Below are positions 5,780 through 14,373 of a DNA stretch of 64,000 bases, piece after piece; positions within the stretch are counted from its first letter, which is position 1, and each line of letters starts with the position of its first letter. The position numbers were made by a program, and so were the translations under genes. Below the pieces are notes generated by a model, which did no database searches, was not told where the DNA came from, and saw only the letters and a program-made list of their open reading frames with translations. Origin of the DNA: Guillardia theta CCMP2712 (Eukaryota; Protista; Cryptophyta); assembly GCF_000315625.1 (NCBI RefSeq), contig NW_005434617.1:241757-305756 (forward strand). Reading direction: 5' to 3'.

Positions 5780-5878
5780 AGCAGGCAGCAGGCAGCAGGC
5801 AGCAGGCAGCAGGCAGCAGGCAGCAGGCAGCAGGCAGCAGGCAGCAGGCAGCAGGCAGCAGGCAGCAGGCAGCAGGCA
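5780..5878. repeat. (GCAGGCA)n heptamer tandem repeat
   Basis: About 14 copies seen directly. Confidence 0.9.
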
Positions 5879-5938
5879 GAGAATAGGTCAAGTTTCCGGT
5901 GGTTGTCGAGTCCTCAAGGGCTCAAGGCCGAGGGGGTC

Positions 5939-7792: not shown

Positions 7793-8287
7793 TTAGATCA
7801 TCTCCAAGAGATTAGATTGGGACATCTTTCGAGCCACAATACTCGCGTAGAATCGGCTCCCACTGCTTCTCTTCATCAGCTGCAGGTTCGACTGGCTGCC
7901 ACGAGGCGTGCTTGCTCCAGTGTTGGTTGGGGACGGGCTTCGTCTGACGGGGGACGGGCTTCGCCTTGAGCGATCATCCGATGTCGGGCTCGGTGACTTT
8001 CTCATAGTGTCAGTTCTCAACCTCTGATGCATGGTTGTCTGTTGCTTGACAGCGACGTTGACTGTGACGTTCTGGCGCTTCTTCTCTTCAATCTTCCTCC
8101 GTTTCTTCTGAAGCAAACCAACGAAGAATGCAATAACTACAAAGGCTGAGACCATCACCATTATCAACCCCCAAGCCCAGTTCCTCTCATCGTTGAAGCG
8201 TTGGATTTCGTCCTGAAGCTTTTCTTTGAACGCTTGGTCATGAATGTGATGGTAAGTGGCAAAAGGGTGGCTCAACGAAGCTTCCAT
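7793..8287 (-). CDS. Unknown single-pass membrane protein, family copy A (164 aa, intronless)
   Basis: ORF MEASLSHP...; TM WAWGLIMVMVSAFVVIAFFVGLL followed by KKRRK; RSPSP repeats; C-terminal RSSGSRFYASIVARK shared with copies B and C. Confidence 0.8.
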   Translation of the reverse strand: MEASLSHPFATYHHIHDQAFKEKLQDEIQRFNDERNWAWGLIMVMVSAFVVIAFFVGLLQKKRRKIEEKKRQNVTVNVAVKQQTTMHQRLRTDTMRKSPSPTSDDRSRRSPSPVRRSPSPTNTGASTPRGSQSNLQLMKRSSGSRFYASIVARKMSQSNLLEMI

Positions 8288-9416
8288 AATCACTGGGTGA
8301 CAGTAGAAATCCGCAGTAGAAATAGAAAGTCTGAGAAGAAGGAAGAAAGCAGAGGAGAAGTAAGAGTGATTGAGGAGATTTAGGACAGGGATTCACTTGA
8401 TATGCCTGAAAGTAGCCAAGGAGGAAAAGATTGCTTCTGCTTATTCTCCGTCCTCTCACGCTCGCCCTCCGTTCTCGTTGGCTTTTCTACCCTCGCTGGC
8501 CCCCTACAAAGATATTAACCACCCTACCCTTTTGATATACATATCTACTGACCATTGATACCCCACCCCCAGATGTATTTCCATGATCACAGATAACCCA
8601 CCTTTTCTAGGAGATAAACAGGGGTACTGAAGTACCCTACCTCTACAGTATATCCCAACCGATTTCTGGTGCAGCCCACCCCCCAGGTTCCGTCGATTCG
8701 CTTCGTCCTCTGCTTTGCTCCAAATCTCGAAAACCACATCCTTTCGGTATATCAAGATCTCCCGGTACCACCCACCCCCCACAGCGAGAAGCGCTATGGA
8801 GTCACACTATACCTGTAGCATGAATATTTCTCAATTGGGATGATATCAAATATTGGGATACATCGAATGCTCTCAACTAGGTCAGCGAGATTGGGTAGGT
8901 GCGGAATAGGAAAACCGACAACTGTTGGCGCTTCCGGACTCTCGGAACGATCCTGTGCTGACATAACTGCGTGATCCGGGATCAATTAAAACAGTTATTA
9001 TATTTTTGATGACAGTCTATGTGGATCAAATGTAGTCTTTTCACCTTGACAGTACGTAATGCGGCCATTACAAAGTTTTCATTCCGAGACTATCGAGGAC
9101 ATGACGTTCCAAAGGGTCAGCCAATTAGCTGAGAGGCCCGGCGTCACTGCAAAGTGCAATTGTTGGTTCGGAACGCGCTGACGGATCTCTTGAGATACTG
9201 ATTGTATCTCGTGACGTATCCGTCAGCATGTTGTCAGCATTAGCAGTGTAACTGTAGTAATCATCCGGATATATCCGACAGGACTGCCTTGCTGACACGC
9301 AATCTTCAGATGCTGGTATATCTCACGAGCTGAGTATAGTAAAAAAAGGGCAACTGTGGTAAACTCATATCAATTCATTGGCTCTCTGGCCTGGGCGACG
9401 GAACCCGTGCGCCACG

Positions 9417-9857
9417 ATGGAGCCGACACCGCTCAGCCCCCTCCCCTCCCACCATCCCCTCGACGACCACCAAGCCATCAGATACGCCCTCCGTAGCGAC
9501 ATGCAGCGCCTCGAGACCGAGAGGACGCTGCTGATCTGGGGGATCATGCTCGCGACGGCTACGGTGATCGCAGTGCTTCTGGGGTACATCTACGCGGGCC
9601 TGCACGAGCGGAGACGCAAGGACGTTCGACCGAAGAGGCTGGCGAGCTACAGGCTGAGCGAGGAGGAGACTATGGGATGGGCAAGGCTGGAGGGCGAGAA
9701 GAGGTCACCCAGCCCGGCGGGTGAGGAGCAGATGCCGAGGACACAACGCAGAGTATCTCCGAGGGGAGGGGGAGGTGTGCCAGGGATAGTGAGGACGAGC
9801 AGCGGGAGCCGATACTACGCGAGCCTGGTCAGTCGGAAGGTGATGATGAGATCATAA
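9417..9857 (+). CDS. Unknown single-pass membrane protein, family copy B (146 aa, intronless)
   Basis: TM LLIWGIMLATATVIAVLLGYIYAGL then ERRRK; RSPSP; C-terminal RTSSGSRYYASLVSRK; near-identical to 10659-11105. Confidence 0.85.
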   Translation: MEPTPLSPLPSHHPLDDHQAIRYALRSDMQRLETERTLLIWGIMLATATVIAVLLGYIYAGLHERRRKDVRPKRLASYRLSEEETMGWARLEGEKRSPSPAGEEQMPRTQRRVSPRGGGGVPGIVRTSSGSRYYASLVSRKVMMRS

Positions 9858-10658
9858 TCGTCTAAAAAACTCTGTAAACTATTTTATTGTTTCGATTAAA
9901 CCTGGGGATAGTTGTTGCGACAAGCTCTTAGAATATCTGATGTTTGTGCATGGATGATCAAAATTTGAAGGGCCCTCGCACATCAAGCGGAACTGAGACC
10001 AGAACCGTGATCAGTCCGTGCAAAGTGTGCGATTGACATTCATCCTCAAGCTAGTCATGCAGATGCAGTCTCAAAGGTAAGCCAAGCTGGAGCAAAATGC
10101 ATTAGAAGTTCACTCCTGTGGTCACCAAGACATAGCGACTCCCGAGGTTGGTTGCCTCTTCTCCTACTTAGTGTGATGTGAAACAGCAACGATCAAGCAG
10201 CTTACAAGATGTGAGAACACGAGAATGATGAGACGACCTTGTGATACCGCATGCCAGCATGAGCAACCATTCTGACCCTTTACTCAAAGTTAAGTTAAAA
10301 TCGGTACGAGGCACGTACAAAGGCAGGTGAACCTCTCCCGGAGCCGATTGGGGCAAGTTGACCGGCACACCCGCCGAGAGTTCCGGCGGAAATATCCGGG
10401 GAGTCGGATACTTCCGATGCTGTAGTAAAAAAACTGGTACAGTAAAGAAAAGGTACAGTTTAGACTCGTGACACACTCGCTCACCCTCCCTCCCTCCCTC
10501 CCTCTCTTCACACTCCCTCCCTCCCTCCCTCACTCACTCACTCACTCACTCACTCACTCCACACGCCCTCCATCCATCCATCCATCCACCCTCCCTCCAT
10601 CAACCCTCCCTCCCTCACTCCCTCCCGCTCTTCACACTCCCTTACTCAAGGCTCTGGT

Positions 10659-11105
10659 ATGGAACCTTCGCCGCTCAGCCCCCTCCCCTCCCACCATCCC
10701 CTCGACGACCACCAAGCCATCAGATACGCCCTCCGTAGCGACATGCAGCGCCTCGAGACCGAGAGGACGCTGCTGATCTGGGGGATCATGCTCGCGACGG
10801 CTACGGTGATCGCAGTGCTTCTGGGGTACATCTACGCGGGCCTGCACGAGCGGAGACGCAAGGAAGCTCGACCGAAGAGGCTGGCGAGCTACAGGCTGAG
10901 CGAGGAGGAGACTATGGGATACAGGAGGGCAAGGCTGGAGGGCGAGAAGAGGTCACCCAGCCCGGCGGGGGAGGCGGCACAAAGGAGGGCATCATCTGGG
11001 GGCTCTCCAAGGGGGGGGGGAGGTGTGCCAGGGATGGTGAGGACGAGCAGCGGGAGCCGATACTACGCGAGCCTGGTCAGTCGGAAGGTGATGATGAGAT
11101 CATAA
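10659..11105 (+). CDS. Unknown single-pass membrane protein, family copy C (148 aa), recent tandem duplicate of copy B
   Basis: DNA nearly identical to 9417-9857 over most of the CDS; differences keep the reading frame and cluster in the Ser/Pro/Arg linker. Confidence 0.85.
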   Translation: MEPSPLSPLPSHHPLDDHQAIRYALRSDMQRLETERTLLIWGIMLATATVIAVLLGYIYAGLHERRRKEARPKRLASYRLSEEETMGYRRARLEGEKRSPSPAGEAAQRRASSGGSPRGGGGVPGMVRTSSGSRYYASLVSRKVMMRS

Positions 11106-12347: not shown

Positions 12348-12659
12348 TTACTTCCTCTTGAGGGTGGAGATGGTCTGCTGGAGGACGGAGTCGGCGGTGG
12401 CAGCAGAGACCTCGATCTTGACGGACTGGGCCTTGACGAGCATCTCGTCGTCCTGGGAGTTGGCCTTGGCGCCGGTGTACTCCTTGTTGGCGTGGGCGGT
12501 GCATCCCCTGTGGTCGAAGACGGTGATGACGGGGGCGCGTCCGGACTTGTCCATGGCCATGGAGAGGGAGGTGGCCGGGGAGCGAAGGCGGGGAGCAGGA
12601 GTGGAAGGAGCGAAGGCGGCGGCAGAGCCGATGAGAGCAGCGAAGGCAACGGAGCGCAT
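12348..12659 (-). CDS. cpeA: Cryptophyte phycoerythrin alpha subunit, short form without lumenal targeting domain (103 aa precursor)
   Basis: Signal peptide ending AAA|F, transit peptide, mature AMDKSGRAPVITVFDHRGC...KEYTGAKANSQDDEMLVK with the bilin-binding FDHRGC Cys; strong codon bias. Confidence 0.97.
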   Translation of the reverse strand: MRSVAFAALIGSAAAFAPSTPAPRLRSPATSLSMAMDKSGRAPVITVFDHRGCTAHANKEYTGAKANSQDDEMLVKAQSVKIEVSAATADSVLQQTISTLKRK

Positions 12660-12690
12660 GGCAGTGGATGACGCCGCTTTTTCTTCAATG

Positions 12691-12703
12691 CTTTTATAGC
12701 CCC
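12691..12703 (-). promoter_or_regulatory. TATA box (GGGGCTATAAAAG) of the minus-strand cpeA
   Basis: Lies ~32-44 nt upstream of the ATG; an identical 13-mer precedes the partner gene. Confidence 0.75.
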
Positions 12704-13935
12704 AATGTCCCACCCCCACCCTCACTCTAGCACTGGAGAAATGAAGGGTGGTTGCATAAGGGGGTGGATGAGCGTCCGAACCGAATGGTCGGAAGAAGGG
12801 GGACGGGCCGCGGGGGTGGGTAGAAAAAGGAAATAGGGTAGGTGGTGACGGTGGTCTCGAATCTTCCCTAGCACCCTTTGTTTGTTCGATGTTGATCTAG
12901 GTAGGGTAGCCCCAAGATTGTTTGAAGAGTTTGAAAAAACGTGTTTTGAAGAAAATAGTAACGTGACTTCTTTCCTGACGCGTATTATTTCTGAATTGAA
13001 AGGTCGCAGCTTGACCAATTTTTCTACCCTACCCCCAGGATCCCCCTACCAATAGCACCCCACCCTGGTAAAGGTGTCCTCCTTTCTATTGCAGAGGTCC
13101 ATGTACTGTACCCCCTTGCGCACAACTTTGCTGGTAAAAGGCAGGGGTCCATCCTATCCAAGATCCGCCCACTCGCAAGCTACAATTTCTTTCATCTTTC
13201 TGTCATGACCACCCCTCATTGCGACTACCCAAAGGCCACTGAAAACCCTACCCTTGACTGTTCCCCATTACTACTGCTGTGTTCCTTTTGCTCGATGTAC
13301 CCCTCCACTCGATGTACCCCTCCAGCAACCACCCCTCTGTTAGGTCAACCAGCCTCCATTCAGACCTTTACACCCCTGGTGGTGTTCGTTTTGTAGCTAT
13401 AGACATACACCCCATCGGAGACCACCCCAACTTCGAGGATTCATTGGGACACCGGTGGATTGTACAGCGGATCCCGGACGAAAGTTGGGTAGTCAGCAGG
13501 AGGGGTGGGGTGTGCTTTTAAAAACAAAAGAGGGGGAGGGGAGGGTCTGCTGTAGAAAAAGTGGCAAAAGATTCAGAGAGAGATAGCACCCGTCCTTTTC
13601 AGCAATATATAAGGGGTCAACCACCAGGAGACTGAAAAGAAAAGCTTGGGGGATTTAAATTTCAGAAAATGATTCATAAGATTAAAAATATAATAAATCT
13701 AAAAGTAAGTTATACAAGGGGGGTGGTAAAATACGGACGCATCTCTTTGTGACGGGAGGGAACGAGGGGTACTGGAAATTTAGGGCAATGGAGGGGGTTG
13801 TCAGATGACCATCAAGTTTTCGTGGCTAAAATGGTGTGGTAGGGTACTTATACACACCGGTTCTTTCGTCTCAAATGCAGTGGATTGAGGGGGTGAGGGT
13901 ATCCCCATCGGTCATTGGGGGTACCGGGGGGGGTC

Positions 13936-13948
13936 GGGGCTATAAAAG
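13936..13948 (+). promoter_or_regulatory. TATA box (GGGGCTATAAAAG) of the plus-strand cpeA
   Basis: Lies ~33-45 nt upstream of ATG 13981; identical to the partner's motif. Confidence 0.75.
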
Positions 13949-13980
13949 GAAGGGACGAAACAATCCACCACACCTCCGCC

Positions 13981-14373
13981 ATGCGCTCTGTTGCCTTCGC
14001 TGCCATCATCGGCTCTGCCGCCGCCTTCTCTCCCTCCATGTCCCTCGACGTCTCCCGCCGTCAGGTCGTCCAGACTGGAGCTGCTGCCGCCGCTGTCGCT
14101 CCCTTCCTCCAGCAGGTTCCTGCTCAGGCTGCCATGGACAAGTCCGGACGCGCCCCCGTCATCACCATCTTCGACCACAGGGGATGCACTGCTCACGCCA
14201 ACAAGGAGTACACCGGCGCCAAGGCTAACTCCCAGGACGACGAGATGTGCGTTAAGGTTGCCTCCGCCAAGATCGCCGTGTCTGAGGGAGACGCCGCGAA
14301 GAAGCTCCAGGAGTTCATCTCCTACCAGGCCAAGGGCATCGATGGACCCTACACTGGCAAGGGCAAGAAGTAA
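13981..14373 (+). CDS. cpeA: Cryptophyte phycoerythrin alpha subunit, long form with twin-arginine lumenal targeting domain (130 aa precursor)
   Basis: Signal peptide AAA|F, SRRQVVQTGAAAAAVAPFL...AQA Tat-type leader, FDHRGC bilin site, extended C-terminal loop KGIDGPYTGK. Confidence 0.97.
   Translation: MRSVAFAAIIGSAAAFSPSMSLDVSRRQVVQTGAAAAAVAPFLQQVPAQAAMDKSGRAPVITIFDHRGCTAHANKEYTGAKANSQDDEMCVKVASAKIAVSEGDAAKKLQEFISYQAKGIDGPYTGKGKK

What the first reader, a model, noticed from the sequence alone, without database searches (positions are those of the whole stretch)
7793..11105. Three-gene cluster of an unrecognised single-pass membrane protein family with a conserved C-terminal SSGSR(F/Y)YAS motif, next to the phycoerythrin pair
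Seen: three intronless ORFs, one divergent and two tandem. All share a His-containing N-terminus (HH..D.QA....L..(E/D).QR...ER), one TM helix, a basic stop-transfer cluster, an RSPSP-rich linker and a terminal SSGSR(F/Y)YAS(I/L)V(A/S)RK motif. Copy A is highly diverged at the DNA level yet keeps these motifs, which implies purifying selection; B/C differences keep the frame. Inference: a signal-peptide-less (N-out) receptor or adaptor with a phospho-regulated cytosolic tail and a short docking motif. I recognise no family. The head-to-head layout mirrors the cpeA pair 1.2 kb away, but a functional link is speculative.
Basis: partly seen in the sequence, partly recalled or inferred. Interest (0 to 1): 0.78.

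Follow-up and report, generated by a model that had tools for sequence, protein, structure and literature searches.

The report
Orphan membrane proteins sharing a tail motif
Three real, selected genes of the alga Guillardia theta encode small single-pass membrane proteins of no known family, and the 12-residue motif in their tails recurs in about 25 other uncharacterised proteins of the genome, so it looks like a portable docking or sorting signal whose reader is unknown.

Summary
Window 7796-8287(-), 9417-9857(+) and 10659-11105(+) are three intronless paralogues in Guillardia theta CCMP2712. Each has a short amphipathic N-helix, one TM helix, a basic cluster, a disordered Ser/Arg/Pro tail and a conserved motif near the C-terminus.

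They are genes:
- dN/dS is 0.03 for copy A against a 92%-identical environmental ortholog.
- A is letter-identical to an MMETSP transcript product.
- Other family members have Hanusia phi orthologs.

No Pfam, PDB, Atlas or literature match exists.

The new point is that the family and its motif are much larger than three genes. At least two more paralogues share the N-helix, TM and tail architecture (contigs C37 and C79). The motif [RK]xSSGSR[FY]YA[NS][VI][VI] occurs at about 25 non-redundant sites on more than 20 contigs (24 DNA-pattern hits against 3 in a control). Codons vary freely, and the hosts are otherwise dissimilar, Pfam-less proteins. Half of them have an upstream TM helix in the same ORF. 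The motif also occurs in 23 metagenome contigs.

I read it as a portable cytosolic docking or sorting motif. Its reader is unknown, and a YxxΦ/adaptor reading is possible but insufficient.

The suggested link to cpeA is not supported. A near-identical cpeA pair on another contig has no such neighbour.

Function is untested. Orphan families are common in protists, so interest is moderate.

The parts
7796..8287 (-). Gene A, 164 aa, intronless bitopic membrane protein (stop codon 7793-7795)
   Evidence: ORF. The product is letter-identical to P0007 from UniRef and MMETSP. dN/dS is 0.033 against the environmental ortholog L007, with 15 synonymous and 2 non-synonymous changes. The CDS has no gaps, while the flanks are 83-91% identical with indels.
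8111..8167 (-). A: TM helix (residues 41-59). It is preceded by an amphipathic N-helix (residues ~17-36) and followed by the basic cluster QKKRRKIEEKKR
   Evidence: Kyte-Doolittle 2.95, flank charges -2/+6. AF2 predicts one continuous helix over residues 8-96, with pLDDT 88-95 for residues 20-60.
7835..7873 (-). A: tail motif KRSSGSRFYASIV (residues 139-151)
   Evidence: Invariant columns. Motif HMM E = 7.5e-11.
9417..9857 (+). Gene B, 146 aa, divergent from A across a 1.13-kb spacer
   Evidence: ORF. Identical to the public model P0001.
9528..9584 (+). B: TM helix (residues 38-56)
   Evidence: Kyte-Doolittle 2.37, C-flank charge +3.
9792..9830 (+). B: tail motif RTSSGSRYYASLV
10659..11105 (+). 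Gene C, 148 aa, tandem copy of B. The public model (P0003, 120 aa) starts at an internal Met and drops the conserved N-helix
   Evidence: ORF. P0003 is a substring of C. B/C DNA similarity (92.6%) begins at the ATG and ends at the stop. dS is mosaic at 0.04, 0.67 and 0.
10770..10826 (+). C: TM helix (residues 38-56)
11040..11078 (+). C: tail motif RTSSGSRYYASLV

Best explanation
A, B and C are expressed, selected genes for small type-III (N-terminus outside, C-terminus cytosolic) single-pass membrane proteins. They belong to a family so far seen by name only in the cryptophytes Guillardia and Hanusia. Each protein has four parts:
1. About 35 residues on the outside form an amphipathic helix continuous with the TM helix. 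Hydrophobic residues are conserved at i, i+4, i+8 and i+11.
2. A Lys/Arg cluster fixes the orientation.
3. A 70-100-residue disordered Ser/Arg/Pro tail follows.
4. Near the end of the tail lies a 12-residue linear motif, [RK]-x-S-S-G-S-R-[FY]-Y-A-[NS]-[VI]-[VI].

The same motif is carried by about 25 otherwise dissimilar, domain-less G. theta proteins, many of them bitopic. I therefore infer that it is a portable cytosolic docking or sorting signal read by one common partner, and that A/B/C are small membrane adaptors or cargo that use it. The upstream serines, often with a basic residue at -3, could make binding phospho-dependent.

Shown here: the genes, the selection, the topology prediction, the recurrence of the motif and its conservation at the protein level. 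Inferred only: the cytosolic exposure, the docking function and the phospho-control.
For: Genes are real. dN/dS is 0.033 for A and 0.38 for paralogue D against environmental orthologs. A, E and the C79 paralogue have exact products in MMETSP transcript sets. Hanusia phi has an ortholog of D (P0008, 68% identical) and of E (P0005).

Topology. Each protein has a single TM segment with positive charge on its C side. AF2 predicts helix 8-96 and a disordered stretch 97-141.

Motif recurrence:
- The motif-only HMM gives 28 matches in the genome.
- The DNA pattern for SGSR[FY]YA gives 24 hits against 3 for the reversed control.
- There are 25 non-redundant instances. S, G, S, R and A are near-invariant, and positions +8 and +9 are both hydrophobic in 19 of 25.
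- Codons for Ser, Arg, Phe, Tyr and Ala vary freely between instances, so conservation acts on the peptide and not on a DNA element.
- Host proteins have no Pfam domain and little similarity outside the motif.
- 13 of 26 instances have a TM-grade segment upstream in the same ORF, 50-200 residues before the motif.

The motif plus a TM helix also occurs in environmental eukaryote proteins (P0009-P0012, P0030). 23 JGI metagenome contigs carry it, in several architectures.
Against: There is no experimental datum on localisation, topology, phosphorylation or binding. Some motif carriers show no TM helix in the ORF read (for example L037, L045 and L052). In some environmental members the charge around the TM helix is ambiguous. 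AF2 puts a weak helix (pLDDT ~59) over the motif, so it could be a structural or membrane-binding element rather than a docking peptide. The carriers might also be one fast-evolving family in which only the TM helix and motif survive, rather than independent users of a portable signal. Some do group into subfamilies (L020, L021/22 and L031).
Confidence: 0.5

Rival explanations
1. The motif is an ordinary tyrosine-based YxxΦ sorting signal. It would be read by the mu subunit of clathrin adaptor complexes (AP-1, AP-2 or AP-3), and A/B/C would be endocytic or endosomal cargo.
For: YASI, YASL and YANV fit Y-x-x-Φ in A, B, C and in 19 of 25 instances. The motif lies in a predicted cytosolic, disordered tail of bitopic proteins.
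Against: 6 of 25 instances break YxxΦ (YAKH, YANQ, YANK, YARA and others), while S-G-S-R and the Ala after Tyr are near-invariant. YxxΦ does not require these residues. Val is a weak Φ. Binding is untested.
Confidence: 0.18
2. The functional core is the conserved N-helix plus TM helix. A/B/C would be small regulatory subunits of a transporter or channel, working like FXYD proteins or phospholamban. The tail motif would be a kinase site that tunes the interaction.
For: The N-helix and TM helix are the best-predicted parts and are conserved across A-D and the C79 paralogue. Small size, a basic juxtamembrane cluster and a Ser-rich tail resemble phospholemman (established knowledge). A basic residue sits at -3 from the first motif Ser in 14 of 25 instances.
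Against: There is no sequence relation to FXYD or any regulin. The motif also occurs in proteins with quite different or no N-helix (E, L025, L028, L034, L038), so it acts independently of that module. The SnRK/CDPK-type consensus (Φ at -5 plus basic at -3) is met in only 4 of 25.
Confidence: 0.12
3. The motif forms a short amphipathic helix that binds the membrane surface or folds back on the protein. It would be a structural element, not a docking peptide.
For: AF2 predicts a helix over residues 144-163 of A. Hydrophobic residues sit at i, i+1, i+4 and i+5, with basic residues on either side.
Against: Confidence is low (pLDDT ~59). Invariance of Gly, Ser and Arg is unusual for a lipid-binding helix. 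The motif sits at very different distances from the TM helix (50-200 residues).
Confidence: 0.1
4. The cluster is functionally tied to the adjacent phycoerythrin alpha (cpeA) pair, for example in antenna assembly or a co-regulated plastid role.
For: The only support is proximity (1.24 kb) and a similar head-to-head layout.
Against: The N-termini are hydrophilic and have no signal peptide, which the cryptophyte plastid route requires (sequence; established knowledge). cpeA-like genes lie on 15 contigs and clear motif genes on more than 20. Besides C57, the only shared contig is C108, where a marginal motif match (E 0.24) lies about 64 kb from cpeA-like hits. The near-identical cpeA pair on C117 lacks any motif gene.
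Confidence: 0.03
5. The ORFs are chance or non-coding.
For: None beyond small size and low-complexity tails.
Against: dN/dS is 0.03, the CDS has no indels while the flanks are indel-rich, transcript products match exactly, and orthologs exist in a second genus.
Confidence: 0.01

Closest known systems
Tyrosine-based YxxΦ sorting signals in cytosolic tails of bitopic membrane proteins (for example TGN38, LAMP1, transferrin receptor)
   Same: A short linear motif containing Y-x-x-hydrophobic, in a disordered cytosolic tail, shared by unrelated membrane proteins. Nearby serines could regulate it.
   Different: The conserved unit here is 12 residues. S-G-S-R and Ala are near-invariant, which YxxΦ does not need. 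A quarter of instances lack the Φ at +3. No adaptor binding is shown.
FXYD proteins / phospholemman and other small bitopic regulators (phospholamban, sarcolipin)
   Same: Small single-pass proteins with a short conserved outside segment, a basic juxtamembrane cluster and a phosphorylatable cytosolic tail.
   Different: There is no sequence similarity, no FXYD motif and no Pfam hit. The tail motif is shared with many larger proteins. No partner is known.
LIR/AIM motifs of membrane-anchored selective-autophagy receptors (FUNDC1, NIX, FAM134B)
   Same: An aromatic-x-x-[ILV] core preceded by serines on a membrane-anchored disordered tail. The generic regex fits 20 of 25 instances.
   Different: An Arg sits two residues before the Tyr and there is no acidic context, which is atypical for a LIR. 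The invariant residues lie outside the LIR core. This is a regex-level resemblance only.
G. theta hypothetical proteins GUITHDRAFT_155071 and GUITHDRAFT_154529 (public annotation)
   Same: They are true relatives. Both carry the motif. GUITHDRAFT_154529 has the same N-helix, TM and tail plan as A-D.
   Different: Both are unnamed and uncharacterised in the public record. They lie on other contigs, away from any cpeA gene.

Membership tests
Any Pfam-A family | Score above the family's gathering threshold | tested here: not met
   hmmscan of A, B and C at E up to 10 gives nothing for B and C. A gets only sub-threshold low-complexity or TM hits (best 18.3 bits against a cut-off of 26.1). Ten other motif carriers also have no domain.
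FXYD (PF02038) | F-x-Y-D motif in the short ectodomain and a match to the family profile | tested here: not met
   No Pfam hit. No F-x-Y-D in the N-terminal 40 residues of A, B or C (sequences).
YxxΦ adaptor-binding signal | Y-x-x-[LIVMF] in an accessible cytosolic tail | tested here: met
   YASI in A and YASL in B and C. 19 of 25 instances genome-wide fit. The tail is predicted cytosolic and disordered.
YxxΦ adaptor-binding signal | Direct binding to an AP mu subunit, with Tyr-dependent trafficking | not testable with these tools
   Needs binding or localisation experiments.
LIR/AIM | [EDST].{0,2}[WFY]xx[ILMV] with acidic or phospho context, and Atg8 binding | tested here: inconclusive
   The regex fits 20 of 25 instances, but a basic Arg lies at -2 of the aromatic residue. 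Binding is not testable.
SnRK1/AMPK/CDPK-type phosphosite | Hydrophobic at -5, basic at -3, Ser at 0, hydrophobic at +4 | tested here: not met
   The +4 aromatic is present in all instances and basic at -3 in 14 of 25, but hydrophobic at -5 in only 5 of 25. The full pattern is met in 4 of 25 (A and B/C are among these).
Cryptophyte plastid- or thylakoid-targeted protein (as for cpeA) | N-terminal signal peptide followed by a transit peptide | tested here: not met
   The N-termini of A, B and C are hydrophilic for about 37 residues. The only hydrophobic segment is at residues 38-59 and is followed by a basic cluster.
Tail-anchored proteins | Single TM helix within about 30 residues of the C-terminus | tested here: not met
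   The TM helix lies at residues 38-59 of 146-164, with a tail of 90-105 residues after it.

The most novel reading that the evidence does not exclude
The motif SSGSRFYA[NS][VI][VI] is a lineage-specific cytosolic address or anchor code of cryptophytes (and whatever protists the metagenome carriers come from). It would be read by a reader domain that is still unknown. For example, it could tie plasma-membrane proteins to the submembrane epiplast (inner periplast sheet) that G. theta is known to have (PMC6212826). Alternatively, it could route them to a cryptophyte-specific compartment. A/B/C would then be minimal adaptors built around this code.
Probability: 0.3. Interest if true: 0.7.

Novelty: categorically new. 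Interest (0 to 1): 0.45.

Why it matters
Cryptophyte cell biology has almost no molecular handles on how membrane proteins are sorted or tied to the periplast. A 12-residue peptide shared by about 25 'dark' proteins, many of them membrane proteins, is a concrete bait. It also corrects public gene models (C is truncated, and D's exact product is not on record). It also removes a tempting but unsupported link to the phycoerythrin genes. The caveat is that orphan families are common in protist genomes and nothing is yet known about function.

Tried and rejected
- Pfam on A, B and C and on 18 other ORFs: nothing.
- ESM Atlas by features and by structure: only generic single-pass proteins, scores 0.84 or lower.
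- PDB sequence search with the motif profile: only chance 7-mers, namely peptide YY (SRYYASL) and an antibody CDR.
- Literature search for motif strings, gene and protein ids and sample ids: 0 papers.
- Exhaustive HMM search of 1.84 billion representatives: only Guillardia and Hanusia.
- Word-index searches: added weak environmental hits that share only the TM helix and motif.
- IMG/VR scan: no viral relative.
- The first metagenome scan failed the tblastn confirmation. The DNA-pattern scan worked.
- Taxonomy of the environmental carriers could not be resolved. Their neighbouring ORFs have no Pfam hits, and L064's 512-aa protein has no G. theta ortholog. Whether the motif extends beyond cryptophytes therefore stays open.
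- Exact-product look-ups for transcripts of B and A returned nothing further.
- A DNA-level repeat or transposon origin for the motif was rejected, because codons and flanks differ.
- The upstream-TM count in any frame (22 of 26) has no control and is not used as evidence.
The counts were redone from the locus files.
- The member on contig C2 has its TM helix and its motif in two separate ORFs (probably exons).
Full report
WHAT IS THERE. The window is part of Guillardia theta CCMP2712. The genome is 87.1 Mb in 669 contigs, and the window is G000:C57:241757-305756. Relatives found are named GUITHDRAFT_… in NCBI.
- A: 7796-8287(-), 164 aa.
- B: 9417-9857(+), 146 aa.
- C: 10659-11105(+), 148 aa.

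A and B are divergent across 1.13 kb, and C follows B in tandem. A is 28-31% identical to B and C, with 40 invariant columns. These fall in the N-terminal helix, an RSPSP stretch and the C-terminal SSGSR[FY]YAS[IL]V[AS]RK.

Each protein has one hydrophobic segment: residues 41-59 in A and 38-56 in B and C. The N flank is neutral or acidic and the C flank carries +3 to +6. No other window comes near TM grade.

AlphaFold2 on an eight-sequence family alignment gives one continuous helix over residues 8-96 of A, with pLDDT 88-95 for residues 20-60. Residues 97-141 are disordered. A weak helix (pLDDT ~59) covers the motif.

THEY ARE REAL GENES.
- A Logan contig (L007, 1137 bp) is colinear with gene A at 92% DNA identity. 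The CDS is 96.5% identical with no gaps, against 83% upstream (23 gap columns) and 91% downstream. The CDS has 15 synonymous and 2 non-synonymous changes, giving dN/dS = 0.033.
- A's product is letter-identical to P0007, which is recorded from UniRef and MMETSP.
- B equals the public model P0001.
- The public model for C (P0003, 120 aa) starts at an internal Met and loses the conserved N-helix.

B and C are similar (92.6%) only from the ATG to the stop codon, and their flanks do not align. dS is mosaic: 0.04 over codons 1-100, 0.67 over codons 101-122 and 0 over the last 24 codons. This is the pattern expected from gene conversion between old duplicates. That part is inference.

THE FAMILY IS LARGER THAN THREE GENES.
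- A profile of A/B/C found a fourth intronless paralogue, D, on contig C37 (156 aa). D has an 88%-identical environmental ortholog (dN/dS 0.38) and a 68%-identical ortholog in Hanusia phi (P0008).
- GUITHDRAFT_154529 on C79 (154 aa, also in MMETSP) has the same plan of N-helix, TM helix and tail.
- GUITHDRAFT_155071 on C100 (188 aa) has the TM helix at its very N-terminus, the same tail and motif, an MMETSP transcript and a Hanusia ortholog, P0005.

Across this core set the conserved N-terminal residues are hydrophobic at i, i+4, i+8 and i+11, plus an E/Q-R cap before the TM helix.

THE MOTIF IS A GENOME-WIDE PEPTIDE.
- A 24-column profile of the motif alone finds 28 places in the genome.
- A degenerate DNA pattern for S-G-S-R-[FY]-Y-A finds 24 places, against 3 for the reversed-pattern control. 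Two of the 24 look like chance.
- Translation shows 27 instances, 25 of them non-redundant, on more than 20 contigs. The consensus is [RK]-x-S-S-G-S-R-[FY]-Y-A-[NS]-[VI]-[VI]-x-[RT]-[E/K/R].
- Codons for every conserved residue vary between instances (AGC, AGT, TCG and TCA for Ser; CGA, AGG, CGC and AGA for Arg; TTT and TTC; TAT and TAC; all four GCN) and the flanks are unrelated. Conservation therefore acts on the peptide, and this is not a repeat or mobile element.
- Carriers include tandem and inverted local pairs (C55, C268), proteins with two or three motifs (C46, C196) and larger Ser-rich proteins (C102, C26). None has a Pfam domain.
- In 13 of 26 instances a TM-grade segment lies upstream in the same ORF, 50-200 residues before the motif, often followed by a basic cluster.
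- The member on contig C2 has its TM helix in the preceding ORF. These two pieces were not joined.

Outside the two named cryptophytes, weak hits P0009-P0012 and P0030 share only a TM helix and SSGSRFYANVV. A pattern scan found 23 JGI metagenome contigs carrying the motif. They show several architectures: 161- and 173-aa N-helix-plus-TM proteins, a 512-aa TM protein with repeated RRTHSDPT, and 145-257-aa proteins without a TM helix. I could not determine their taxonomy.

WHAT IT PROBABLY DOES. The charge distribution puts the tail in the cytosol (positive-inside rule, established knowledge). A 12-residue peptide kept near-invariant in disordered tails of otherwise unrelated proteins is the signature of a short linear motif read by a common partner. 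My best explanation (0.5) is that A/B/C are small bitopic adaptors or cargo, and that their tail presents a portable docking or sorting signal.

The rival readings fare as follows:
- The Y-A-x-[VIL] core fits YxxΦ in 19 of 25 instances and a generic LIR regex in 20 of 25. The near-invariant S-G-S-R and Ala are not explained by either, and six instances break YxxΦ.
- A basic residue at -3 (14 of 25) hints at a basophilic kinase site. The fuller SnRK/CDPK pattern is met in only 4 of 25.
- The F/Y-Y-x-x-Φ-Φ spacing and the weak AF2 helix allow an amphipathic-helix reading.
- An FXYD- or phospholamban-like regulatory role for the N-helix/TM module remains possible. It has no sequence support.

THE cpeA LINK. 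cpeA-like sequences give 23 hits on 15 contigs. A 98-100% identical head-to-head cpeA pair on C117 has no motif gene. Besides C57, the only contig with both is C108, where a marginal motif match (E 0.24) lies about 64 kb from cpeA-like hits. A, B and C lack the signal peptide that nucleus-encoded cryptophyte plastid proteins need. The adjacency looks accidental.

KNOWN OR NEW. Pfam, PDB, the ESM Atlas, IMG/VR and the full-text library give nothing. The genes are in the public annotation only as hypothetical proteins. The family and the motif are therefore undescribed as far as these tools can see. That said, lineage-restricted orphan families are common in protists and no function is shown, so I score interest as moderate. 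The earlier scan notes returned for this genome concern other loci and did not bear on this reading.

Noticed in passing
window 12348-12725(-) and 13915-14373(+); G000:C117:152903-154659: The head-to-head phycoerythrin alpha (cpeA) pair of this window has a 98-100% identical head-to-head duplicate on contig C117. This is a recent segmental duplication that did not include genes A, B and C.
   Followed up: partly
window 10484-10626: A (CCCT)n / 15-nt pyrimidine-rich tandem array lies directly upstream of gene C's ATG. It is in frame with the ORF, which is why the open frame reads 213 aa. It is probably promoter or 5'UTR sequence and is absent upstream of B.
   Followed up: no
window 5780-5879: A perfect 14-copy heptanucleotide repeat (AGCAGGC) that reads as QQAAGSR repeats in one frame.
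   Followed up: no
window 9417-9857 vs 10659-11105: B and C are identical at the DNA level over codons 5-68 and over the last 24 codons, but saturated (dS 0.67) over 22 codons of the linker, and their flanks are unalignable. This is a gene-conversion mosaic.
   Followed up: partly
window 10659-10742: The public gene model for C (120 aa) starts at an internal Met. The full ORF restores the conserved N-helix. The exact 156-aa product of paralogue D (L004:1492-1959:-) is not on record in the protein collection.
   Followed up: partly
L064:2527-4062(-) (JGI metagenome contig Ga0315899_10025963): A 512-aa environmental motif carrier has a TM helix, several RRTHSDPT repeats (RxxSxP, resembling a 14-3-3 site) and the motif 20 residues from its end. 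It has no Pfam hit and no G. theta ortholog.
   Followed up: partly
L020/L040 (G000:C46:~297-298 kb) and L031 (G000:C184): A subfamily of motif carriers shares an N-terminal hydrophobic signature, C-x-C-x-LL-x-PFQ-x-L-x-AI-x-F. The C46 gene carries two full motifs plus a degenerate one (SSGSRFHAKHL).
   Followed up: no
L021/L022 (G000:C268:5080-7824): An inverted pair of near-identical motif genes flanks an assembly gap (run of N) next to a (GACAGACA)n-type repeat.
   Followed up: no
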